From Paragordius varius (taxonomy: Eukaryota > Animalia > Nematomorpha): 64,000 nt of DNA. Shown piece after piece: positions 18,665 through 53,967 of this stretch. Under the pieces are notes generated by a model. That model made no database searches. It was not told the origin of the DNA and saw nothing but the letters and a program-made list of their open reading frames with translations. Both the position numbers and the translations under genes were made by a program. The stretch lies in NCBI GenBank assembly GCA_964247055.1, contig OZ176055.1:7688001-7752000 (forward strand), read 5' to 3'. Each line of letters starts with the position of its first letter. Positions within the stretch are counted from its first letter, which is position 1.

Positions 18665-19380
18665 AATGCTTATCCCCTTATCTGTTCAATATGTGTACAG
18701 AAATGATAATGAGAAAATTGGATGTTAAAAATATAGGTGTAAGAATAGGAGGGAGAACAATCAATAATTTAAGGTTTGCAGAGGATTCCACTCTTATAGC
18801 TAAAAGTGTAAATGATTAAAAAGAATTGATTGAAGAGATTCGAAAGGAAAGTTGAGTTATGGTCTTATGCTTAATCCTAACAAAAACAAAATATTATGTA
18901 CTGGGGTAAAGCCTTCAATAATTATCGATGAGGTGCAAATAGAAGTAGTTAATCAGTTAACGTTTTTGGGTGCTATAATTTCCGAGGATGGCTCTTCAAC
19001 TCCTGACATCAGAAAGAGAATTGAATTGGGTAGAGAAGCGATGACCAAATTAAAAGAGATTTGTAAAAACAAAAGCGTTTTTAATTGAAACTAAAAAAAG
19101 ATTATTCTACTGTGTTGTACTCCCGGTCACGACGTATGGCTGTGAGAGCTGGACACTCAGAAAAAGAGACAAAGAAAGGCTCATGGCTTTGGAAAGGAGC
19201 TGCTGGCGTAAAATGCTAGGATATACCTGGACGGATAAAATTAAAAATGGAAGTCTAACTACATAAATATATCTTGAAACAAACATCCTGGAAATAATTC
19301 TAAAAAGAACGTTTTATTTTGGTCATAGAACGTTTTATTTTGGTCATGTAATGCGATCAAATTCTTTAGAGAAAGACACA
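18665..19380 (+). mobile_element. RTE-clade (BovB/RTE-1-like) LINE reverse-transcriptase fragment, 5'-truncated
   Basis: LSPYLFNMCTEMIMR..GVRIGGRTINNLRFAEDSTL, then TFLGAIISEDG...DIRKRIELGR and YGCESWTL..CWRKMLG; stops and frameshifts present. Confidence 0.9.
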
Positions 19381-20004
19381 TGCCCATGTGAAGGTTGAAA
19401 CAATGTTCATACATTCGTTCTTTTGGTGAAGATAAAAAGCTCATCCTACCTTCACTTGCGTGCTATAAAACGAGCATATAAAATTGAGGATCGTAGGATT
19501 TTAATACTTAGTAACTTTTGAACTATATGGAATTTTTGAATTCTGAAAAGTGTTCCAAATAAAGTAAACACTATATTATAAGATTTTAGCTGACAAAAGA
19601 TTATTTGTTGAAAGTATTATCAAAAATTTTAATTATATTAGAAGGCATTAAAACTAAATAAATACTTGGGTATTTTTTATTAATTAGCTCTAATTTTTAG
19701 TCCAGTATAATTTTCGTTGGCAATTAAAACTAAAAAATGCCATATAATTACTATCCATCAACATTCGACACTATAGTGGATAATCCTGGATATATATCAT
19801 ATTTTAATCGTCCAAGTAAGTTTCTTAAATCTTTTTTTATCTATTATTTATAGGCTTGATCCCATATCTCAGACATCATCCAGTCTTAATATGTGGCTTC
19901 ATCGGAAATCAACCTCAAAAAGTACACTCAACATTCACATAAAATAAACATATGATTTAAAACGAGCCCATTTCGGTGAAGGTAGAGACACCTTCACATG
20001 GGCT
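19381..20004. mobile_element. 624-bp non-autonomous TIR DNA transposon inserted into the RTE fragment
   Basis: 13-bp perfect TIR GCCCATGTGAAGG (19382-19394) / CCTTCACATGGGC (19991-20003); subterminal inverted motif CTACCTTCAC/GTGAAGGTAG; 3-bp direct repeat ACA at 19378-19380 and 20005-20007; removing it restores RTE coding EKDT|MFGK. Confidence 0.8.
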
Positions 20005-20140
20005 ACAATGTTTGGGAAGGAGAAGGACAAAGGAAACGATGCCCCACAGATGAGGTGGTTGGATATGATAAAAGAGGAGATTAAAATGACGTTGAACGAC
20101 AGTGTAACGATAAAAGATAGAAGGAAGGGGAAAGCAAAAG
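20005..20140 (+). mobile_element. 3' continuation of the RTE LINE
   Basis: MFGKEKDKG..QMRWLDMIKEEIKMTL..DRRK resembles the RTE C-terminus (MLGKIEG..RMRWLDGI..DREAW). Confidence 0.75.
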
Positions 20141-20534
20141 TAAATACTATATCCAAAAAGTCGTTTACGACTTAGGAATAACCAACCAACCAATAATTTT
20201 TTGGAATGAAGTATCCAGTTTTCTTCAAAAAAAATTATTAAAAAAATGTTCGCAATATTTGCTATATGACCCAAAAGGTGATTAGCTTCTTAAAAACTCG
20301 TAAAACCAAAAGCGCTCTCCTAATCCTCATTTTTGAATCTGAATATATCATACAGCCCAATTTTTTGCGTAGGGTTGTTATTCAGACAAGGTCACATCGA
20401 TGTGTTAAAAACTATAATTTTTGCTTTTTATTTTGACTAAATGTGTTATTTTTTAACATTCGCCATAAATATTCAAAGTATTTTCAATTTTTTATGAAAG
20501 ATGATATTTAGTCATTTTTAAGTACGGCTCTAAG

Positions 20535-21485
20535 ATGCAGATTACATCAGGTACTGGGCTGGTGAAAATAACTGCTGGAGTTGTTGGTGCATTATTTGTT
20601 GGATATTGTTTTTATTTTGATAAAAAGCGGCGCAGCCATCCGGATTTTAAACGAAAATTACGCGAAAGTTTTTTAAATTTTATTGTTTAGAAAGGGCTAA
20701 ACAACGACAGATATTAGAAAATGGTAATGGCCTTGATATACCAGATATTCACGATCATGAAGCTATGCAGAAATTCTTTTTGCAAGAGATAACCAAAGGA
20801 GAGGAACTTATGATGCTTGGTTTATATTTCTTATACTATTATTCTTTATTGATATGATCCATCATTTAAACAATATTTTGTACAGGTGATATTGATTCCG
20901 GAATCGAACATTTAAGTTATGCGGTGGCTATATGTTCACAGCGGGAACAATTGCTTGGCGTGTTGGAGAGAACACTTCCTCCACAAATTTTTATCATGTT
21001 AGTTCAAAAATTACCACAAGCTCAAAAAGTTAATATATAGTTTGTTTTCTTAACCAAAGATATCTAGTACCCGTTGTGTTAAACCTTTTTCACGGATTTT
21101 AATCTAATATATATGTTTATTTTATGTTATTATGCTATAAATTACTGTTGAATATAATTTATTTTATAGACTGGTTAAACTGTTATATGCTTATTTTAAA
21201 TTATTATAAAGCTTTTTTTAATACCGATATCTGAGTTAACAAATGTTTAATACTTGGGTAAAATGTTTTTTGTATTCAACACACTTTTTTGCAAGTGGGT
21301 GCAAATTTGAAATTAATTATTAGTTTACGATATTTTTTTACCTATAGAAAATATTTGGAAAACTTTCTCCCACTGGTAATGCAAATACTAGTCTCAATGC
21401 TAAATTTTCACCGTTGGACATTGAAGAAAAATTGATTATGGATTCTCCAACGATACCCATTATATCTGAGGAGGATGTAGATTAA
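20535..21485 (+). CDS. TOMM20: Mitochondrial import receptor subunit TOM20
   Basis: Exons 20535-20667, 20691-20819, 20886-21028, 21348-21485 (introns 23, 66, 319 nt). Product MQITSGTGLVKITAGVVGALFVGYCFYFDKKRRSHPDFKRKLREKRAKQRQ...EAMQKFFLQEITKGEELMMLGDIDSGIEHLSYAVAICSQREQLLGVLERTLPPQIF...ISEEDVD* has the GYCxYFDxKRRSxPxF, QKFFLxEI and TLPPxxF motifs and the acidic C-terminus. Confidence 0.97.
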
Positions 21486-21558
21486 ACAAATATGTTTTAT
21501 TACTGAATTGATTAATTAAAGTTAATATTATCTCAAATATGAATACATTCATTGTATA

Positions 21559-21564
21559 AATAAA
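21559..21564 (+). promoter_or_regulatory. Candidate polyadenylation signal of TOMM20
   Basis: AATAAA 74 nt after the stop, followed by T-rich sequence; AATAAA is frequent by chance in such AT-rich DNA. Confidence 0.4.
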
Positions 21565-22351
21565 TGTTTTTACTGTACTATACTTGAAATGAATGTATAA
21601 TCCTTTGTTTTACAGTTAATGATTTTTTGATTAAACATTTTATTTTCGTAAAACATATATTGATTTGTTAAAGCTTAACTTGGCAAAGTGTGTAAATTTA
21701 TGTCAAATTATTTTACAAATTTTGGTACCGATTACATTTTTACTTTTGATTGCAATTTCAAATTGCAAACTACTTTAGTAAAAAATTCTTTCTACTGTTT
21801 TAAACAAAATTATAAATTTTGGTTTTATTACTGCATAAAACCCAAGAAAACATATAAAGTTTTGTACGTCAAAGGAAAAAACTAAATTAACAGAATGGCT
21901 CAAATGAATATGGAATGAGATATCTTTAACTTTTGTCCCATGTAACAATGTTAAAAGTTCAATTCAAAGAAATATCTAAAAATTTATTTGGTAAATGCCA
22001 TAATAAGGGACGTTACAAGTATCAATAAAAATGAAAAATAAATTCAAATATTATATATATATATCTATAACATATGGTCCAAATAGGTATTTTTGACTAT
22101 TGCGCAACTTTTATAAAATAAATTGTTATTTAATTGTTTACAATAATTATTGGCTATCTTGTATATTATGTTGATTGTTTTAAATAATATTTATACCATG
22201 TTGCAACAAATTAATTATTTATATATATTTATATAAGGCCTAAAATTACATAATTGAATTGCATTAATACGGGTTTTGGGGGGAATGTTTAATACTGCGA
22301 TACTCTCTAATTAAGCCTTGACTTTTGAAAAATACTATTTAGACACAGACA

Positions 22352-25300
22352 CTAAACCGAGGTTGGTTGGCATTTAGATATCCGTTCCCAAAAATGTTTT
22401 ACATTTGTATCATTGATACTCTTATGATTGTCTTGAGTTTTGTGAATTGGTAAAGAAGTAGTTTCCTTTACGAGCTGGTGTTCAAAAATATTTTGAGTGG
22501 TGGTCGTAACACTACTTATGGTATGTGTTAATGTAGTTATCGCTTCACAAAATTCCTCATCATTTTCGGAATCTTCATCATCATCAAGCTTGGCTATGGG
22601 AGGATTTTTACCCACTTGATTTTGAAATTTGTTATGTCTTGGTGCTTTTGTCATTTCTTTGGCGAGCAAATTATTTGAGAGGCCATTTTTGTTGCTAACA
22701 TAGTTGTTTGATAACTGTTTTTGATAACCAATAACTTCTGGAGCATCTGAACTGGCTGATAGCAAACTGTTTGGACTATCTATCCCTGATGAGGTTGATG
22801 AATGAGTCGTAATGTTGGAAACTGTCATATTCGGTTTAGAGTTGTTATCCTTTTCAAAATCGCTTTTGGTATCGATCATCAATTTCTAATTATTAAGGTA
22901 CAGAGATATAGAATAATCTGTTAATTATATTTTATACTAATCTTCAATTTTAAATGAACTGATACTTAAGCTAATGCTATAGTTTATTCAAATCGCCCCA
23001 AAAATTTATTCATACAATTGAATGTGTCCAACATTGGTTGTAATACTAAACTTTTTTGTTAAATGTTTGTAAACGTTATATAAGCGAAATTAATGCAATC
23101 AAGCAACTGATTTTGGCGAAATCGGTTGTAATTCATGGAGTAAAATAATGGATCGAGAAAAGGGTAAAATTAATAAATTTAGTTTAAAAGATATAATTAA
23201 CCAAATTAATTGGAAATTTGGTATCTGGATGATTACGGGGTCGTGACTCCCGCAAAGCTACCAAAATTTATCAATAACAAAATCAGCCCTGAACCTAATG
23301 TTAAAGAATATCTTTAATACAATATTAACCGTGAAATTTTTGTAAAAAAAGCTCTATTTTTGACTGAAATTAAACAGAATGATATGTAAAATTCGTCATC
23401 CATGTTTTAACCAGATTATTATGTTTACTCATGGGTAGGACAATGGTCACTATCATAGTGAGCGAATTTAATTATTTAGAACATAAGCGCCTGATAGGAC
23501 GCGGCGCGTACCTTTAACATAAAACGAGTTCGGGACAGAAACGATGGCATTGCATCCAGAAAATGTTTGCAAAAAAATCTATTGGACAAAAGCCGTCTTG
23601 TTTATTGTAAAAAAAGCTTAGACATTTATTTATGGCCGACAGTAATTATAATGACAAATCATCGACCACTCACCTCAATGACATAATCCGCAGAAAGGTA
23701 AAAAATCTTGTAAACTAAACGATTTAATATAAAGGTCTGAAATTAGCAGATGCTCTTTTCGTAATTCACATCTGTAAATCAACCAGTGTGTGCTAATCCA
23801 ATGGTCACCCATAAAATAAAAAGTATTTTGTAAAATGTTTTTTGCGAAAATATATATAAAATATGACTAAGGAATTACCAAATTTTTGTGTATCATAGCC
23901 TCATCATCTATCAACTGTGGATCAAAACTTATATCATGATTCAAATGGGGATATGATGGATATTGATTGGCCGTAAAGTTACAGTAAGGATTATTTGTTA
24001 ATTTTGGCTGTAAAATGCGAGGCATGTTAATGCCCTTAATTTTACCACCCATGTTACTTGATTCAGTACGACAGTTTTTATCGTTTGTTGTCATCTTTTT
24101 AGGTGACATTATTTGCGATCTTGAAGTATTTAGATACGAATCGTCTCCCTTCGAGTGTGGACTAAAAAATGTTAGAAAATTTAATATATACGTTGAGAAA
24201 TTGAATTTATCATTTTATTTTTACATTCGACAATAATTACTTGTAGTAATCGAAAATTCATGTTTTAAATAAACTCAAACAATGCTGAATTTAAATGATT
24301 AATATCTCGTAGGATTTTATGTAAGTTAATCTTCAAAATTAATGTAAATCATCTAAATATTATTAGACATTATAATATGAAGCTGAGCTGTTTCACCATA
24401 AACATAAAAATAAGTACGTTAAATTATATTTGATTACTTGTAAACTCTGTACTTTTCATCATTTTTTGATTTTTTCTTATACGTGAAAGCTGAAAATTTG
24501 TTTCGTCCAAACCAAAATAATTTGCGATCTAATATAATAATTTCAACATTATTTATAGATATTTCTTTTAATTAATTAAACACCAATAATGATAACAAAA
24601 ATTCATACCTAAGAAACTGTTCATGAAAAGTTTTGAATCTGGTTTAGATTTGCCTTTTTTATATTTATCCGCTGTTTCTCCCAGGTGATCTAATTCGTCT
24701 TTAGATTGAAATTCAGAATTGGCGGCGAGAGGCGATGTAGCCCGACCAGGTTTTATAAACATGGTGTAAAAGATGAAAACCATAAGTGTCAAAATCAGAC
24801 AAAGTACACAGAAGGCTGACGTTAAGAGGATTTTTCTAGAGCTTTCATTATTCCATACTAAAAAATATGTGTTTAAAAAATATTATTAATATAATTGATC
24901 ATTTATTTAACGCATTTTTGTTGTGTTTATCTTCAAGTTTTCGCAAACTTTCAATAAAAATACTAAGATTGGATAACAAAAAGGAATTTTTAACAAATAA
25001 AAAGTTATATAACATTAAATGTTCAAAATTTTAGAATGGCAACCTCTAGCGAACGTTCCTTGCGGTTCCACCACAATTATATCCACTAGGCTAGATCGGA
25101 TCATGCCAAACTCATTGTAAGCTTCACACATAATTTTTGGTATAAAATGTTTATTATTATTATTATGATGGGCCTTTTCAGAGTCCGACATCATGTTTTG
25201 GGGTAAAATCTCATTTCCAGTTATCTCGTGGTTATTTTGTATGTGACCCCTGTCCTGGTAGTAATATGAGGTGTATGGAGAAAATAATTCACTAACATTC

Positions 25301-40300: not shown

Positions 40301-43300
40301 TAGTATGCTATTGATAAATGTAAAGCATGTGAATTTATGTTTTGTCTCCTTACAGTCAAAATAAATCACAATAATTATGATTGTATTTTCTCGTAATTGA
40401 ATTACAGAAAACTTACTAAATAATTGGCTGTTGCTATATATATAATAATGCCCAGTCACGCGACGTCGAAATAAGCACTGTCACGCATCTCTTCTTAATC
40501 GAAGAAGGAGTCATGGAAATTGGGTTCACATTTTTTTATTTATTTGGTGCAATTAATAATAATAATAATAATAGTTATTATTTCTTTAACTTGATGAACA
40601 TCCTTATATGTAAATTTTGCTAGGTCCAATTTAGATTGAGGGATTCATAACACTCCTTAATATTTAAGTAATAGTATGGTAAACCTATATTTAAAATAGA
40701 TAATTTCGCACAACCTTTATTTTATAATAAAATCTCTATGTTATATGTCCTCGCACATAGAACCAAAATACAATATTAATTATTTGATATATTGGCCGGT
40801 TAAAGCTTTATATACATACATTATTGTATAAATTTTTCATTTCATATTATTTTAAGCCCAAAATTATATTTTTAAATACATTGATGTTTTGTCGTTTTTA
40901 GTCCAGCTTTCAGCGCAACATAACATTATAAGAAAATATTAATAAATGAAATTCCTTTTGTTAGTTTGATATCAGGAGTTTTCCATAAAATTTTGTTGTA
41001 TTTAACATTTGTTGTTCTCTTTATCATTATTATTAGAAACTTAATAGAAACATGTATTGGATATTTAAGTATTTGGGTTTCTAATACTTTTGATAAATAT
41101 TGTGTTAGCGAATTTCACACAATTTTCGAAACAATGGTATGCCAACTTTCCGCATTTGACTGCAAAATGATTAAAAAATCATTTAACTGGATAATCAAGA
41201 TATCCTATGACTATGAGGAATGTGATTTACCCAGCAATATTGAGCCTGTATCTATTGTTGATTTTCTCAAAATACTTTTTAAACATTCATGGGTGAATGA
41301 ATACAACTTTGGCATAATTTTTTAACATTTGGATTGCTAGTGGTGATAGATATTTTAAGTATATAAGGTGAAGACTGTATGATTATTGATTTGTAGGCGT
41401 GAATACGTAGTCAAAGAGAAGACGCGAAAGGTACTCAGCCGATTAATTAAGCATATTTGACCCAATGATCATGCGAATTTTGTGCCTTAAAGAAATTTCA
41501 TGGTACCCGCTTTTCTTAATCATCAAAAGAAAAAGGCGAAGCCATCGTTTGCTAGTGGAAACATTACATAAACGTGCATCGATTAATGCAAAAAAAATTT
41601 TGGAAATTTAAAAATGATTTTATTGTAAAGAGATTTGCAGAATCATGACATATATCACAAAAACATCAACAGGCAATGATCAATAATCTCAATGAGTCAC
41701 ATGCATAATAAACACGATAAAGTGTCTCTTTTTTAGATTCAAATCGGTAAATATTGTGGTTTTCACCTATCCTAGCCGAGTCCATTAACCAAAAACACCC
41801 ATATCATTTCGGCAAGACTATGCTCTGTGTCTCTTATGGAACCTGATCAATATCAATATTACTAACTTTAAAAGCCCCTTTAAATTGTTATTGCACATCG
41901 CCGTCGCCGTTATTTTTATTTAAAACATGGCCTTAATAAAAATGGCAGCAATGGGCTTAACGGCATCTCTAATAAATTTCGCTACAGGACAATGCTCGTC
42001 ACACAGCAAAACTAGTGCGTTTTGAAATCACTTAAACATTTAATTCATTAGCATCCACCGTACTCCTGGCCCAAAGCCAACTAGTACCATTCAGCACCAA
42101 TAAATCGCTCGAAGAACATTACTATAATAATATCGAAAACGTTGGAAAATGATGATGCATGGTTTGCCCCAAAAAATAATCAGCTTCTAAGGCATGGCAT
42201 TTATATATATGAGAGATAGGCGCATAATGTAGAATCCTCCAGAAAGTATTTTGAATAAAACTAATATTTGAATCCCCTTCAATGCATGTTTTATGATTCC
42301 TTATCTATATAGAAATGGAAAGTGGTGGCTTTGTGATCTGTTTCCGGAAAACCGGTAGACCCATTCAAATCCAAATATCGAAAAAATATAATCATTAACG
42401 AATGTCCCGACAATAGCTTCGCCCTTTTTAATTAGGCCTCCAGTTCGGGCCCACCCCGTGTAAAAAACGGTTTTTTTGAAAACAGAAATTTACAAAATCG
42501 TGTCTTTGAGACAATTTTCCGAAAAACGTGTTGGACGATTCGCTTTTAAATATGATTTTTTTTACTTATTTTCGAGTGTCCGAACATAGTGGGCTCGCTT
42601 TTTTGATTTAGGCCCTCTTTTTAGCCGTTCCTCCCATAAAAAGCCATTTCGAATTGCCCACAAAAATAATTTTTTGAATCTATTTTCCCCAATGGTATGA
42701 GACAATAAAAATTCATTAGCATTCCAGGTATTACCTTTTAAAAGGCAAAAATTTTAATCATGCGTTTCCTTTATATTGGCTGCTGAGTAAGGAGATACCC
42801 GCTAAAAACTGCCCCGTCATATCGAAATAGCGTGCCTTTGGGGCTAAATTTCAGAAAATTTATCATGCCATATGAGTTCAATAGCTGCTTAAAATATTAC
42901 CCGTATCAAAGCAAAAATTTAGGTCATGCGATTTTTATAGCCGTTAATTAGGCCCTTCACGCCCTAACTGCGCCACCATAGAATAATTTTTTCGTTTTGA
43001 GGCAATTTTACCGAAAACATATGGATCAATCATGATCAGGTATCTCCGTCAATAGTCAAAAATTTTATTCAAGCGCTCTTTTCCTCTGGTTAGTGAGCTA
43101 CTCACCTAAAACTGCATCACCATATTTAAATTGCGTTGTTTAGGAGTTAATTTTCAGAAAACTTATCTGGCCATATAAGTTTAATAAGGGCCTGAAATAT
43201 TACCCGTAAAAAGGCAAAAATAGTCGAGCGGTTCTTTTTAATTACCCTTTAATTAGGCCCTTGCCTTAAATGCGCCACCATAGAATGACCTTTTGGTTTT

Positions 43301-46300: not shown

Positions 46301-49300
46301 CATTAATGAATATATGTCAATTTATTAACTACAATTTTATTTTCCAACTGAAGACTTGTGTTGTACTTATGCCAGCTTGCAAAATTAAAATAAACCAAAG
46401 AGTAAAATATTTAATTTAATGTGCATTTTGTTTCACCCATATATATATATACAATTATCATAAAAAGGCTTAAAAGCATAAAGTTTTATTATTTATTTGT
46501 AGGTGTAATGTATTGCAATAGATTCACCGTCAATTAATATTTGAATGTATTTATCTTCTTCAATTTATTGTCAGTTTTATTATCCGGAAGAAATTCTATC
46601 ACTCAGAATTATAATTACACATAAATTATTTCTACAGAACATACAACTCCAAAATTTTCATCGACAATTTTATTCCCTAAAAACCATTCTTAAACATCAG
46701 TGGACATATCATACTGATTCTTTGATTCTTATATCTCAATACACCACCACTAAACTAAATTCCTACATGGAAAGCAATAATTCTAAAATAAGCTCCCGTA
46801 ATTTAGAAATAAATATGGCCACCTGGAACACTCGTGGCACTTCAGATAACAAATTGAATATAATAATTCGCGAGATGAAACGTTTAAACATCCATGTGTT
46901 AGGGCTGTCGGAGACTCATATGCAACAACACAAAATATACGACAATTACTCGTTTTATAACTCGGGCGGTGAACTCAAACCAAATAAATGCGGTTTCTTA
47001 ATATCGAATAATCTTGCCAAACATACTGATATATATAGACCTATTTCCGATCGAATTATAGCCCTACGAATTAACACCAGACCCCAGGCTATAACAATAT
47101 ATCAAATCTATGCCCCCACGAGTGTCTCACCCGAAGACGAATGCGAAAAGTTCTATAATGAGTTACAAATGGCTCTCTGTGAAACATCCATGAAAGACAT
47201 AACTTTCATCATCGGCGATTTTAACGCTATCATAGCTAACGATAAAACAGACAAGGTCACTGGTGGAAAAGGCCTTGGTAAAGTCAAAAACCCCCATGGT
47301 GAAAGGCTAATTAATTTTTGCCAACAATCATTCTCTTTATAGCGAACTCGTTTTCAAACAACCTAACAGACGGCTCTACACCTGGACCTGACCGTGTCGT
47401 AAACACAGGAATCAAATATATTACATATTGGGAATGCAATAATACAAGCTCATTTCAAAACATCCGGTGCTACTCGAGTGCATGCAACTCAGATCATAAC
47501 CTATTAATGCCAAAATCAAAATAAAGCTACAACTTCCCCAGCCGCAAAAAAACTTTTCCAAAACTAAATTGAACTACAAACTTATACCTGCCGATTTTAC
47601 GCCAATCCTTAACAAAAATTTGAATCCCTAAAATACGAAACATAGAACACAGATGATCTTTGGTCTACTATTTACAAAATTACCACCGAAACAGCTAAAG
47701 AATATATACCGCCTGCCACAACAAAAAACAAAAATTTTACCATATCACAACAAAGCATCGACCTAATTGTATAGAGAAGAGTAGCAAAATCCAAGGGCAC
47801 TCCCCTTGAGTACAAAAATATTAATAATGAACTACAAAAAAGCATAAGATCCGACAAAAAATCTCATTATAATACAATCTGCGCTAACCTAGAGCAAGCT
47901 GCTAAACTTAATCACAACTACTTCTCTTATATTAAAGGCATTCAACCGCGCAAAAAACAAATGTACAAAGGTCCTATGTCTCATTCAAACGGAAAACTTC
48001 TAACCGATAAAAAAGGAGTAATTAAACTCTGGGAAGAATACATCCAAAATTTATTCTCAAAAATCAAATACAATCGCCATGAACTCTAAACAAACTTATG
48101 ACCCACCTATACTAAAAGAAGAAATTGAATAGGCCCTGAAGCATTCATCAACCGGCAAAGCAGAAGGATTCAATGATATCCCTACCGAGTTACAACGGCA
48201 CATTCCCTTAAAATTAATTCCTTCGTTATTTCAAAAAATCTTCAATGAGGCAACATTCCCGACGGACTGGAACAAATCACTAGTGGTCCCTATATTCAAA
48301 AAGGGCGATCCTAAACTATGTAAAAACTACCGTACAATAGCATTGATTTAGAGAAAAAAAAGGATGCCGAGACATGATTTCAAACCTTAGATGGATAATG
48401 GAAAAAAACTGTGAATTCCAAAATGAGCTACACCTATGTTTCGTGGATTTCTCTAAAGCCTTTGATACCGTTTAACATGACATTCTCTGGAAGGCCCTTA
48501 AATAAATAGGATCCGATCACTTAATCAAACTAATTAAATCCATATACTCCAACTCCTACCTATCACTTAACACCCCGCATGGCTCGACCTCTTGGAGCCC
48601 AATTAACATAGGTCTGCGTCAAGGCTGCATTTTATCCCCCATGTTGTTCAACATATATTTGGAATGTATCATAAGGGATCTAAATCTGCCAGGAATAAAA
48701 GTAGGGGATCACACTCTGACGACTCTCCACTAGGCAGACGACACGGTTATCTTAGCAAATTCACAAACAAACCTCGAAAACAGTCTCCGAACTTTTATAA
48801 ATGTGTGCAAAAAAATACAATCTTACATTAAACCTCAACAAAACTAAAATATTGCATATCAACTCCTCTCATTTCTATGACTCGCTTCGGATTAATAACG
48901 GAACAATTCAAGTAGTCAACGAATACACATACCTTGGAAGCATTATCAACAACTCAAGCTCCAGTTCCCAAGAAATAAGAAGACGCATAGCTATCGCCAA
49001 ATGCGCTCTATCCTCACACTGCAAGTTATGGAAATCTCATGACATAACCCTTAAAACAAAAATCCGACTAGTAAATGCATTAATTTTTCTTATCATGTTA
49101 TACGGATGTGAAAGCTGGACTATCAAAAGTGGAGACGAAAAATGAATAAACGCTTTAATGTTTTGCTGGAGAAAAATACTTGGTATAACATGGAAGGACC
49201 AAATAAAGGACATCGACATTGTAAATAAAATTAAGGCACAAACAACGCTTCGGGGTAAAATAATAAAACAAAAATTCGTTACTTCGGACACATTATTCGG

Positions 49301-52300: not shown

Positions 52301-53967
52301 ATAATGATAAAGAGGGCGCATAATAAAAAATCATATTATACAAAGTTTTTAGGTGGAATTATAATTTTTGTTTTAAAATTCCTGTTAAAATGATGGTTAA
52401 TATCAGAAAATGCAAAAAACTTGAGTGGCAGTAAAATTTGTTGTCTAGTGTAATAGACTTACATTGTTTCAAAACAGTGTGCCAAATTTATAGTCCAAAT
52501 TTAGTTTTTAATTTCGTATTAATTAAGTTAGCAATTTTCAGTACACAAAAATTTAGGGGTCACGTTCCACCTTTGCAAATTATTTGGTATATTAAAATAG
52601 GCTTGTGTTTCAATAGTTTACATTTATTAGGTAAAACGTCTTAATAAATCAGATTTTTTTAATCAAAAAAAGTATTTTATAATTTTTTTTAAAAATCATG
52701 GGTATAGTATTACTTTATTCGAGCTTAGTTTTTTTAGCTTATATACCATTAAATACAACTCCGTTTGTTAACAAAGGTAGGAAAAAAAATATAATTTAAA
52801 TTTAAGCAATATTAAATATTTATATTTTACATGTAATATATACTTTATAAAAAATAATTTTGTAATTTAGTTTGATTTAAACACAACTATTAATTCCATC
52901 CCAGCGAAACATATGTTAAACTGAAATAAAGAAGCTTGTGTCCAACTATGATTTTTTAAATCCCTTAGTAATAATAACCCCCCATAAACAAATTGTTACG
53001 AAATTTTATGAAATTTTAAAATCCAGATTTTCATAATAGAGATTTTTATAAATGTCGGAGCTGATATACAAATTTTCTAAATGCAACCTATCCCTATTTA
53101 TTTTGGCTGAAAACTGGTGAGCTCTATGGGAAAAATATAAAATTAGATGTTTTTGATATCGAATTTGATATATTAAATATAAACGGTGCGACCTGAAACT
53201 GTAGTTTAAATATTTTTTAAGAAAAATAAAAGAATCATGTAATCTTGGTATATTTTTATATCAGAATTATATATATTATATGTATATCATCAAGATATTT
53301 TTTATCTCTCGGTTTTGTGGAATGAATAACCTAAATATCTAATGAATAAATTTTATGGAAAAATATATTGAATCGTTTTTATATGAAATAAAACATTTTC
53401 TCTGATATTGCAAATTCAAAAAATAGTGATCTAAAGATTTACCTTTTGTTAAACAAAGACCATTTACACAATCATAAAAGGTAGGACATTCATAAAATCG
53501 GCAATTTAAAAAGTCTACAAGTTAAAAAAATGGATACGAATGCACTCCTTTGTTTGACATTGACATTTTTTATCACATTTTCCAGTTAGGCATTCTATAT
53601 GGCTTTGACAGGGCGTATTAACATTTTTTTCTAATTTGCCAAATAAAATACATTAAACTATTGGCGCATTCACCATTGATATAATACTGATAAGTATCAC
53701 AAACACAACTATTATTTAAACAATTATTGGTAAGACATTCATAACTTGAAGTACACTTGGAATTATACGGTTTTTCTGAAACTTTAGAGACACAGATATA
53801 CTTGATTGGCAAGTTTGGTTCAGCGAATAAAAATTTTCTTTGCACAAGCATTTATTACCTATTTTCCAATCGCAAATTTCATTTGTTTTGCAATCACTGT
53901 TAAATTGACAGCTAAAAATTATAAATGGTAAGCAAATAAGTAGTGCATAAAAAGATATTGTTAACAT
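37341..53967 (-). CDS. Uncharacterised type I membrane protein with Cys-rich EB/EGF-like modules (~330 aa), interrupted by ultra-short introns and a putative ~13-kb intron
   Basis: Proposed exons 53967-53802, 53775-53659 (or from 53781), 53630-53538, 53514-53443, 40307-40185, 38288-38181, 37904-37831 (or 37843), 37759-37673, 37555-37492, 37465-37341. Signal-like MLTISFYALLICLPFIIFS; modules CQFNSDCKTNEICDWKIGNKCLCKENFYSLNQTC, CTSSYECLTNNCLNNSCVCDTYQYYINGEC, CQSHIECLTGKCDKKCQCQTKEC, CRFYECPTFYDCVNGLC, CNNDQDCEFVSQFSKCVDYRCQCSIDLSAKTVC; TM IGVIIMMAITFAVLVGFIMYWII. All ectodomain introns are phase 1. Linkage of the 53-kb and 37-40-kb blocks and the cytoplasmic exons are less certain. Confidence 0.7.
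41480..42270 (+). pseudogene. Mariner (Mos1-like) transposase relic
   Basis: HFGKTMLCV (~41805), LQDNARHTAK (~41980), HPPYS (~42052), WFAPKN (~42160), RKYFE* (42241-42258), in mariner order with frameshifts; TIRs not confidently identified. Confidence 0.8.
42304..44612 (+). mobile_element. Non-autonomous Helitron, second copy, with five ~310-bp units and a nested MITE
   Basis: A|TCTATATAG 5' end; hairpin CTCGGGCTGC-GTA-GCAGTACGAG (44579-44601) 11 nt before the CTAA|T end; unit motif at ~42791, 43095, 43416, 43728, 44039. Confidence 0.8.
44225..44469. mobile_element. MITE family A copy nested in the Helitron
   Basis: TIRs taccatttacagttcaaattcaccct / gaatttgaattataaatggta; absent from the homologous site of the 34037-37212 copy (taaacaatatattagtatgaa). 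Confidence 0.85.
44670..44960 (-). mobile_element. Possible LTR-retrotransposon integrase-core relic
   Basis: Minus-strand KFCEQTGFRK and SDGLIENQRKSFLRQ resemble the integrase core (FC..LGI.K ... QSDGLVERFNRTL); very decayed. Confidence 0.35.
46500..49517 (+). mobile_element. Near full-length degenerate RTE-clade LINE (AP endonuclease + RT) with (CAA)n tail
   Basis: Endonuclease MATWNTRG..LGLSETH..SDRIIALRI..IYAPTS..IIGDFNA; RT GLRQGCILSPMLFNIYL, ADDTV, YTYLGSII..EIRRRIAIAK, MLYGCESWT, MLGKVNGKRGRG..RIRWVD; tail caacaacaacaaca at 49495-49517; multiple frameshifts. 5' boundary approximate. Confidence 0.93.

What the first reader, a model, noticed from the sequence alone, without database searches (positions are those of the whole stretch)
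20668..20690. 23-nt intron at the conserved first-intron position of the housekeeping gene TOMM20
Seen: after ...CGC GAA A the sequence GTTTTTTAAATTTTATTGTTTAG interrupts the frame, and read-through hits TAG. Excising these 23 nt gives KLRE-KRAKQRQILENGNGLDI-P, the same 17-residue spacing to the proline as human RLRE-RRKKQKLAKERAGLSKL-P (recalled from memory). The only nearby in-frame alternative acceptor (AG ending 20717, 50-nt intron) would delete the basic KRAKQR segment. Known from memory, to be verified: vertebrate TOMM20 has a phase-1 intron at this site. A normally essential gene makes a pseudogene explanation unlikely, so this is the best internal control for the micro-intron class.
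Basis: partly seen in the sequence, partly recalled or inferred. Interest (0 to 1): 0.85.

Follow-up and report, generated by a model that had tools for sequence, protein, structure and literature searches.

The report
23-base intron in hairworm-like TOM20
The only TOM20 (mitochondrial import receptor) gene of this AT-rich, hairworm-like animal is split, at an intron site shared with lamprey, horseshoe crab, a brachiopod and a hairworm, by a piece of only 23 bases that almost certainly is a real intron, shorter than animal introns were long thought to get, though no RNA was available to show the cut.

Summary
At 20668-20690 a 23-nt GT..AG segment interrupts the TOM20 reading frame, and read-through stops at TAG 20688-20690.

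Removing exactly these 23 nt gives a protein that lines up without gaps with human TOM20 residues 8-129 and with Gordionus (hairworm) TOM20, the closest of 311 homologues.

I mapped exon-intron structures myself in four species. Lamprey, Lingula, Limulus and Gordionus all have a phase-1 intron in the same codon after "LRE", of 1503, 1617, 6686 and 39 nt. Exon 2 (129 nt) and exon 3 (143 nt) have the same lengths as in Gordionus.

The gene is single-copy. A diverged sample of the same species label shows 8 listed exon changes (6 synonymous, 2 conservative), and 2 of 23 and 7 of 66 changed bases in introns 1 and 2, with GT and AG kept.

Introns of 23, 66 and 319 nt therefore sit in one gene.

No RNA run held the gene, so splicing is inferred, not shown.

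Earlier follow-ups of this scan already reported the 22-28 nt intron class elsewhere in this genome. Published animal introns under 30 nt are limited to myxobolids and dicyemids.

The parts
20535..20667 (+). TOM20 exon 1 (133 nt; ATG 20535; N-terminal membrane anchor and the YFDKKRRSHPDFKRKLRE segment, plus the first base of codon 45)
   Evidence: Translation. Pfam MAS20 E=2.6e-12. Residues 12-44 align ungapped to human TOM20 8-40.
20668..20690 (+). Intron 1: 23 nt, GT..AG, phase 1, 13% GC and 65% T (GTTTTTTAAATTTTATTGTTTAG); this is the finding
   Evidence: Read-through stops at TAG. Removal restores ungapped colinearity. A phase-1 intron lies in the same codon in lamprey, Lingula, Limulus and Gordionus. 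It carries 2 substitutions in sample X5 with GT and AG kept.
20691..20819 (+). Exon 2 (129 nt; basic linker KRAKQRQ..., IPDIHD, QKFFLQEITKGEEL)
   Evidence: Translation. Aligns to human TOM20 43-83. Same length as Gordionus exon 2, and as Lingula exons 2+3 (47+82).
20820..20885 (+). Intron 2: 66 nt, GTTTAT..TACAG, phase 1, in the Gly codon before DIDSG
   Evidence: Same position and phase as the 443, 672, 6731 and 40 nt introns of lamprey, Lingula, Limulus and Gordionus. At least 7 substitutions in X5.
20886..21028 (+). Exon 3 (143 nt; core presequence-binding region)
   Evidence: Translation. Aligns to human TOM20 87-129. The exon is 143 nt in all five species mapped.
21029..21347 (+). Intron 3: 319 nt, GTTAAT..CTATAG, phase 0, after ...PQAQK
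   Evidence: Same position and phase as the last intron of lamprey, Lingula, Limulus and Gordionus. Sequence.
21348..21485 (+). Exon 4 (new here): KIFGKLSPTG...IISEEDVD plus TAA stop at 21483-21485. The full spliced frame is 180 codons with no internal stop.
   Evidence: Translation. Gordionus has ...QAHK|KIFGSS...AEEDVD across the same junction. The acidic C-terminal EDVE/EDVD motif aligns. Frame check.
21559..21564 (+). AATAAA, a possible poly(A) signal 74 nt after the stop codon
   Evidence: Read directly; inference only.

Best explanation
Window 20535-21485 (+) is the single, functional TOM20 gene of an AT-rich ecdysozoan closest to the hairworm Gordionus. It has four exons and encodes 180 aa. 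The 23-nt segment 20668-20690 is a genuine U2-type GT-AG spliceosomal intron in phase 1. It is the shrunken ortholog of an ancient bilaterian intron that measures 39 nt in Gordionus and 1.5-6.7 kb in lamprey, Lingula and Limulus.

Shown here: the interruption is real DNA; only this excision gives a colinear TOM20; the site and phase are those of bona fide introns elsewhere; and the flanks evolve as coding sequence while the 23 nt evolve as intron.

Inferred: the excision itself. The likely signals are GU at +1/+2, a TTTAT branch-like motif with its A 8 nt before the 3' junction, a U-rich body, and UAG. Base-pairing to a canonical U1 5' end would be very weak (donor AAA|GUUUUU), so recognition probably works across the intron rather than through a strong 5' site.
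For: 1. Colinearity. The exon pieces match human TOM20 8-40, 43-83 and 87-129 without gaps, leaving exactly one residue for each split codon. The same holds for Gordionus P0311, the best of 311 TOM20s at 93/147 identities.
2. Linker length. With the 23-nt splice the linker from LRE to P is 17 aa and starts KR.K, as in Gordionus (KRTKLKLEKENENKLNI) and in 12 of 14 representatives.
3. Intron position. There is a phase-1 intron after LRE in lamprey (1503 nt), Lingula (1617), Limulus (6686...KLRE|KRAKAKK) and Gordionus (39). Exon 2 is 129 nt and exon 3 is 143 nt in both Gordionus and this window.
4. Single locus. Only one TOM20 locus is found in G000.
5. Variation in sample X5. There are 8 listed exon changes, 6 synonymous and 2 conservative, 7 of them at third codon positions. 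Intron 1 has 2 changes in 23 nt and intron 2 has 7 in 66 nt. GT and AG are kept.
6. Composition. The intron is 13% GC against 33-38% in the exons.
Against: No RNA evidence. No run on record as RNA held the gene, all four runs laid were DNA contigs with the intron retained, and no conspecific spliced protein exists in the 5.8-billion-protein collection within the length range searched.

The donor GTTTTT has almost no complementarity to the canonical U1 5' end ACTTACCTG found in this genome. A branch A 8 nt from the 3' junction is unusually close.

The list of X5 differences is truncated: 18 of 24 substitutions are listed, and the one 1-nt gap is not placed. The substitution pattern is therefore a partial count.
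Confidence: 0.88

Rival explanations
1. An intron is removed here, but with other boundaries. The candidates are GT-AG 20685-20710 (26 nt, giving ...KLRESFLNFI-ILENG...), GC-AG 20662-20690 (29 nt), and GT-AG 20668-20717 (50 nt).
For: All three restore the frame without stops. The 26-nt option gives a linker of 16 aa, close to the usual 15-17.
Against: The 26-nt option replaces the basic KRAKQRQ cluster, which every homologue has after LRE, with SFLNFI. The 50-nt option leaves an 8-aa linker. The 29-nt option deletes the conserved RE. None of them sits at the orthologous intron codon, and none gives the 129-nt exon 2 shared with Gordionus. The X5 change at 20695 is synonymous only if that base is coding, as in the 23-nt model.
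Confidence: 0.04
2. Programmed -1 ribosomal frameshifting. The upstream frame contains T TTT TTA (20669-20675), a classic slippery heptamer (known from HIV-1 gag-pol). A -1 slip there enters the downstream frame, which is open from 20651.
For: The heptamer lies in the correct zero frame (read). The downstream frame is open across the whole segment. A small 8-bp hairpin starts 8 nt after the heptamer.
Against: The product would carry about 8 extra hydrophobic residues (FFKFYCLE) that no TOM20 has. The heptamer is broken by T>A at 20672 in X5, in X4 and in an alternative X1 contig (438 of 973 depth), while GT and AG are kept. The downstream fold is no better than shuffled sequence, z = -0.31. 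The site is an intron in four other animals.
Confidence: 0.01
3. The locus is a decaying or silent TOM20 pseudogene, and the 23 nt are an insertion that broke it.
For: No expression data are available.
Against: It is the only TOM20 locus in the assembly. The spliced frame has no internal stop over 180 codons. The listed substitutions are mostly synonymous. The 'insertion' sits exactly at an ancient intron site in the right phase with GT..AG ends.
Confidence: 0.04
4. The frame break comes from an assembly or sequencing artefact in a T-run, or the segment is removed at the DNA level in somatic cells.
For: The segment is T-rich and of low complexity. Some animals eliminate DNA during development.
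Against: The same sequence is present in contigs of two other studies and another sample of the first. X3 is identical with 0 gaps over 20565-20833, X4 has 0 gaps over 20531-20681, and X5 spans 20488-21018. No joint skipping 20668-20690 was reported in any DNA run (table 5), though contigs drop rare variants.
Confidence: 0.02

Closest known systems
TOM20 first intron of other bilaterians (lamprey GCA_015708825.1, Lingula anatina, Limulus polyphemus, Gordionus sp. m RMFG-2023 XP_065322596.1)
   Same: Same codon (directly after ...LRE), same phase 1, GT..AG ends. The downstream exon lengths are conserved: 143 nt in all species, and 129 nt in Gordionus.
   Different: The length is 23 nt here against 39 nt in Gordionus and 1503-6686 nt in the others. 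The donor is GTTTTT here, against GTAAAA, GTAAGT or GTGAGT in the others.
Ultra-short (<30 nt) animal introns of myxobolid myxozoans and Dicyema japonicum (Hadjez et al. 2026, PMC13644364; Lu et al. 2019, PMC6736024)
   Same: The length range matches (medians there are 22-27 nt). Splice-site motifs are reduced. The lineage is parasitic, if this is a hairworm.
   Different: In those lineages nearly the whole intron population is tiny. Here the same gene also has introns of 66 and 319 nt, and the CCT genes have introns of hundreds of nt. The phylum is different (Ecdysozoa). Neither 'Nematomorpha' nor 'hairworm' occurs in the main text of that 51-genome survey.
Tiny introns of ciliates (Paramecium about 25 nt, Stentor 15-16 nt) and nucleomorphs
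   Same: GT..AG introns in the 15-25 nt size range, AT-rich, with the branch A close to the 3' end (from the literature list and general knowledge).
   Different: Those are unicellular eukaryotes with uniformly tiny introns and modified spliceosome inventories. Here U1 snRNA has a canonical 5' end, and long introns coexist with the tiny one.

Membership tests
Animal TOM20 (Pfam MAS20, PF02064) | Match to the MAS20 profile over its whole length | tested here: met
   Exon pieces hit profile positions 1-31, 56-90 and 94-132 at E = 2.6e-12, 1e-4 and 1.8e-8. The genome search gives the same three hits.
Animal TOM20 (Pfam MAS20, PF02064) | N-terminal membrane anchor, basic linker, presequence-binding core and acidic C-terminal EDVE-like end, colinear with solved TOM20 | tested here: met
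   Ungapped alignment to human TOM20 8-129. The C-terminal SEEDVD aligns with EEDVE/EDDVE.
U2-type GT-AG spliceosomal intron | GT at the 5' end and AG at the 3' end, and removal restores an open frame | tested here: met
   (0 internal stops in 180 codons).
U2-type GT-AG spliceosomal intron | Orthologous position and phase with annotated introns in other species | tested here: met
   four species, phase 1, same codon.
U2-type GT-AG spliceosomal intron | Branch-point motif and pyrimidine tract | tested here: inconclusive
   TTTAT (intron positions 12-16) fits yUnAy, and the intron is 65% T. The A would lie only 8 nt from the 3' junction. No lariat data exist.
U2-type GT-AG spliceosomal intron | Removal seen in RNA | not testable with these tools
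   No RNA run held the gene, and the single read-laying run showed DNA contigs only.
Genome-wide ultra-short-intron animals (Myxobolidae / Dicyemida type) | Intron shorter than 30 nt with reduced splice-site motifs | tested here: met
   23 nt, with donor GTTTTT lacking +3 purine and +5 G.
Genome-wide ultra-short-intron animals (Myxobolidae / Dicyemida type) | Most introns of the genome are ultra-short (median 22-27 nt) | tested here: not met
   The same gene has introns of 66 and 319 nt. In the CCT genes the gaps I checked between adjacent exon matches are about 60 nt to several hundred nt or more, none under about 45 nt.
-1 programmed ribosomal frameshift site | Conserved slippery heptamer plus a downstream stimulatory structure | tested here: not met
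   The heptamer is present but polymorphic (T>A at 20672). The downstream fold has z = -0.31.

The most novel reading that the evidence does not exclude
This hairworm-like lineage may run two modes of intron recognition side by side. In one, a discrete class of 22-28 nt introns, often the first intron of a gene, is cut out with almost no 5'-site complementarity to a canonical U1. In the other, ordinary introns of 60 nt to kilobases are spliced in the same transcripts. TOM20 intron 1, an ancient bilaterian intron shrunk from kilobases to 23 nt, would then be the cleanest case for working out how an otherwise standard animal spliceosome handles an intron below the supposed limit of about 30 nt.
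Probability: 0.3. Interest if true: 0.8.

Novelty: new variant of a known kind. Interest (0 to 1): 0.55.

Why it matters
Introns under about 30 nt were long considered absent from animals. A 2026 survey (PMC13644364) found them only in myxobolid myxozoans and in Dicyema, both with uniformly tiny introns.

This TOM20 intron is an unusually clean case in a third lineage, an ecdysozoan:
- The gene is single-copy and conserved.
- The intron site is shared across bilaterians.
- The exon lengths are identical to those of a hairworm relative.
- Ordinary introns of 66 and 319 nt sit in the same gene.

The practical point is that gene finders with a minimum intron length would truncate this gene at 51 aa. 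The locus therefore makes a good positive control for re-annotating this genome. It is also a ready minigene substrate for asking how a spliceosome with a canonical U1 removes a 23-nt intron.

Tried and rejected
1. RNA evidence. The look-up of sequencing runs listed no RNA holder. The runs guessed to be RNA and carrying the same species label (X6-X10) hold next to none of the sampled words. The four runs laid are all DNA contigs.
2. Conspecific transcript-derived protein. The exon-1 piece alone found no candidates. Profile searches seeded with the window's exon pieces found 2142 and 1328 TOM20s, but nothing near-identical among those listed.
3. My own ORF-bridging scan for micro-introns over 264 kb of this genome (window plus 20 x 10 kb from contig C1). 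GT..AG pairs of 20-29 nt were not enriched over AG..GT, TG..GA or GA..TG controls. Exons are too short and open frames too common by chance, so the test has no power and says nothing about the class. Two in-window candidates it gave (42543-42565 and 47665-47683, minus strand) had no Pfam support and are left unverified.
4. CCT genes as a sample of introns: no adjacent exon matches less than about 45 nt apart. Micro-introns are therefore a minority of introns.
5. A changed U1 5' end to explain the GTT donors: rejected, because U1 is canonical.
6. -1 frameshifting, pseudogene, assembly error and DNA elimination: see the rival explanations.
7. The Gordionus isoform P0272 was not on record for a locus look-up. 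Its cluster mate P0311 was.

Full report
**Observation.** The window is AT-rich (about 21-36% GC). From ATG 20535 an ORF encodes MQITSGTGLVKITAGVVGALFVGYCFYFDKKRRSHPDFKRKLRE. After ...CGC GAA A (ending at 20667) comes GTTTTTTAAATTTTATTGTTTAG (20668-20690). Read-through gives SFLNFIV and the stop TAG at 20688-20690. The frame beginning at 20693 reads RAKQRQILENGNGLDIPDIHDHEAMQKFFLQEITKGEELMMLG. The description and coordinates are correct.

**What the gene is.** Each exon piece hits Pfam MAS20/TOM20 at profile positions 1-31, 56-90 and 94-132. Against solved structures:
- the exon-1 piece, residues 12-44, aligns to human TOM20 8-40;
- the exon-2 piece, residues 2-42, aligns to 43-83;
- the exon-3 piece, residues 3-45, aligns to 87-129.

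All three alignments are ungapped. The offsets leave exactly one residue for each split codon. Removing 23 nt, and a second intron of 66 nt at 20820-20885, therefore gives perfect colinearity. A six-frame search of the whole 110.6-Mb assembly with the family model finds only this locus.

**A fourth exon.** Many homologues predicted from genomic DNA read through a donor right after ...Q. Full-length TOM20s end in an acidic EDVE motif. In the window, AAA|GTTAAT at 21028/21029 and ...CTATAG|AAA at 21347/21348 join exon 3 to KIFGKLSPTG...IISEEDVD, followed by a stop codon (21348-21485). Gordionus TOM20 has ...QAHK|KIFGSS...AEEDVD at the same junction. The model is now four exons of 133, 129, 143 and 138 nt, encoding 180 codons with no internal stop. 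The introns measure 23, 66 and 319 nt.

**Is 20668-20690 the right excision?** I listed all GT/GC..AG pairs that link the two frames. There are 61, among them 29 nt (GC 20662-20690), 26 nt (20685-20710) and 50 nt (20668-20717). Comparing that list with the human alignment, the 23-nt pair is the only one that removes no aligned residue.
- With the 23-nt pair, the linker between LRE and the Pro of IPD is 17 aa and begins KRAK.
- Among representative animal TOM20s the linker is 17 aa in 12 cases and 15 aa in 2, and it opens with a basic cluster in 13 of the 14.
- Gordionus has KRTKLKLEKENENKLNI (17 aa), which I count by eye as 8 of 17 identical to the window without a gap.
- The 50-nt option leaves 8 aa.
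- The 26-nt option swaps the basic cluster for SFLNFI.

**Intron-position test.** I wrote an exact protein-to-genome spliced aligner and applied it to loci fetched for annotated proteins.

| Species | Protein / locus | Exons | Phase-1 intron after LRE |
|---|---|---|---|
| Lamprey | P0191 / L016 | 5 | 1503 nt |
| Lingula | P0065 / L017 | 5 | 1617 nt |
| Limulus | P0157 / L018 | 5 | 6686 nt (KLRE\|KRAKAKK) |
| Gordionus | P0311 = XP_065322596.1 / L019 | 4 | 39 nt |

The window's other two introns also match in position and phase: phase 1 in the Gly codon before D.E.G, and phase 0 after ...Q/K. The three non-hairworms have one more intron, in phase 0 before [LI]PD. Gordionus and the window both lack it. 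Exon 2 is 129 nt and exon 3 is 143 nt in both Gordionus and the window, and the 143-nt exon is found in all five species. Gordionus TOM20 is also the best match of 311 TOM20 sequences collected (93/147 identities, ungapped), and its locus is 22.7% GC. The window thus comes from a hairworm or a close relative. It is not Gordionus itself: protein identity is about 63% and the assembly is 110.6 Mb, whereas published hairworm genomes are 200-300 Mb.

**DNA reality and selection.** No RNA run held the gene. The four runs laid are DNA contigs that keep the intron.
- X1 may be the sample the window was assembled from.
- X3 comes from another study with another organism label. It is identical over 20565-20833 with no gaps.
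- X4 comes from a third study and covers 20531-20681 with no gaps.
- X5 is another sample with the same species label. One contig spans 20488-21018 with 24 substitutions and one 1-nt gap.

Eighteen of the 24 X5 substitutions are listed. One lies in the 5' UTR. Eight lie in exons: 6 are synonymous, the other two are V22I and D60E, and 7 of the 8 are at third codon positions. Two lie in intron 1 (20672 and 20687) and 7 in intron 2. GT and AG of intron 1 are unchanged. An alternative X1 contig also carries 20672 T>A. This is the pattern expected of coding exons around a neutral intron. The caveat is that 6 substitutions and the gap are not placed.

**Rivals.**
- The upstream frame holds T TTT TTA (20669-20675), a classic -1 slippery heptamer, and the downstream frame is open from 20651. 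Frameshifting is therefore formally possible. However, it would add about 8 residues that no homologue has. The heptamer is broken by the 20672 polymorphism. The downstream fold is ordinary, with z = -0.31.
- A pseudogene, an assembly error and DNA-level excision are disfavoured. The gene is single-copy, the substitution pattern is that of a coding gene, several independent DNA data sets agree, and no joint was reported at this site.

**Mechanism (inferred).** The intron is 13% GC and 65% T, against 33-38% GC in the exons. It has TTTAT at positions 12-16, a yUnAy-like branch motif whose A lies 8 nt from the 3' junction, and it ends in TTTAG. All three donors of the gene have T at +3 (GTTTTT, GTTTAT, GTTAAT), whereas Gordionus has GTAA... 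U1 snRNA genes of this genome keep the canonical 5' end ACTTACCTG, and some copies have ACTTACTTG. Donor recognition therefore cannot rest on U1 pairing beyond GU. Definition across the very short, U-rich intron is the likeliest mode.

**Context and novelty.** The literature held here reports animal introns under 30 nt only for myxobolid myxozoans and Dicyema. There the whole intron population is tiny (PMC13644364; PMC6736024). The hairworm genome papers I opened do not discuss introns. In this genome the micro-intron coexists with ordinary introns in the same gene, and the CCT genes show gaps of about 60 nt to several hundred nt or more between adjacent exon matches.

Earlier follow-ups of this scan had already reported a class of 22-28 nt introns elsewhere in this genome. 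One claims RNA support at another gene. I did not test those notes, and they are not counted as evidence here.

**Limits.** My own attempt at a controlled genome-wide count by ORF bridging had no power. All protein work was done exon by exon.

**Verdict.** Splicing itself remains inferred.

Noticed in passing
window 20668-20673, 20820-20825, 21029-21034; L040-L043: All three TOM20 donors have T at +3 (GTTTTT, GTTTAT, GTTAAT), which is rare in animals. The U1 snRNA genes nevertheless keep the canonical 5' end ACTTACCTG, and two of the four copies aligned have ACTTACTTG. Most of the 17 U1 matches lie in two groups on contig C6, at about 565-633 kb and about 3.72-3.73 Mb.
   Followed up: partly
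window 20669-20675: T TTT TTA, a perfect -1 slippery heptamer (known from HIV-1 gag-pol), lies in the zero frame inside the micro-intron and would lead into the downstream frame. It is polymorphic (T>A at 20672), so it is probably a chance product of the T-run.
   Followed up: yes
window 20683-20704: The last 8 nt of the intron (TTGTTTAG) can pair with CTAAACAA in exon 2 (20697-20704), forming an 8-bp hairpin across the 3' splice site. The overall fold is not better than shuffles (z = -0.31).
   Followed up: partly
window 20250-24500 in runs X3 and X4: DNA identical or near-identical to this locus appears at low depth (about 2-6x) in runs of two other studies labelled as other organisms (B and C). 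This may reflect a host-parasite association, prey, or contamination.
   Followed up: no
window 20250-24500 in runs X1 and X5: Diversity is very high. Alternative X1 contigs differ by many substitutions and indels (for example 17 substitutions and 25 gap letters over 21937-22408). Sample X5, with the same species label, is about 4.5% diverged over the TOM20 locus, which suggests cryptic species or very large heterozygosity.
   Followed up: no
L019:2001-2594 (Gordionus sp. m RMFG-2023, OX940787.2): The Gordionus TOM20 gene has three introns of 39, 40 and 44 nt, all GTAA..AG. Short introns of about 40 nt seem to be the hairworm baseline from which the 23-nt intron shrank further. Both species lack the phase-0 intron before [LI]PD that lamprey, Lingula and Limulus have.
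   Followed up: yes
window 18852-19088 (+) and 19900-20300: Reverse-transcriptase-like ORF fragments (…LGAIISEDGSSTPDIRKRIELGREAMTKLKEI…) lie just upstream of TOM20, a retroelement remnant within 350 nt to 1.7 kb of the gene start.
   Followed up: no
window 42543-42565 (-) and 47665-47683 (-): Two further short GT..AG segments (23 and 19 nt, AT-rich) bridge long open frames on the minus strand. The flanking pieces have no Pfam match, so they remain unverified micro-intron candidates.
   Followed up: partly
window 53431-53454 and 53514-53536 (-): Read on the minus strand, these are GTTTAA...TTTAG (24 nt) and GTATCC...TTGTAG (23 nt), inside the cysteine-rich gene that another follow-up reported. 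The second donor, GTATCC, resembles a U12-type 5' site.
   Followed up: no
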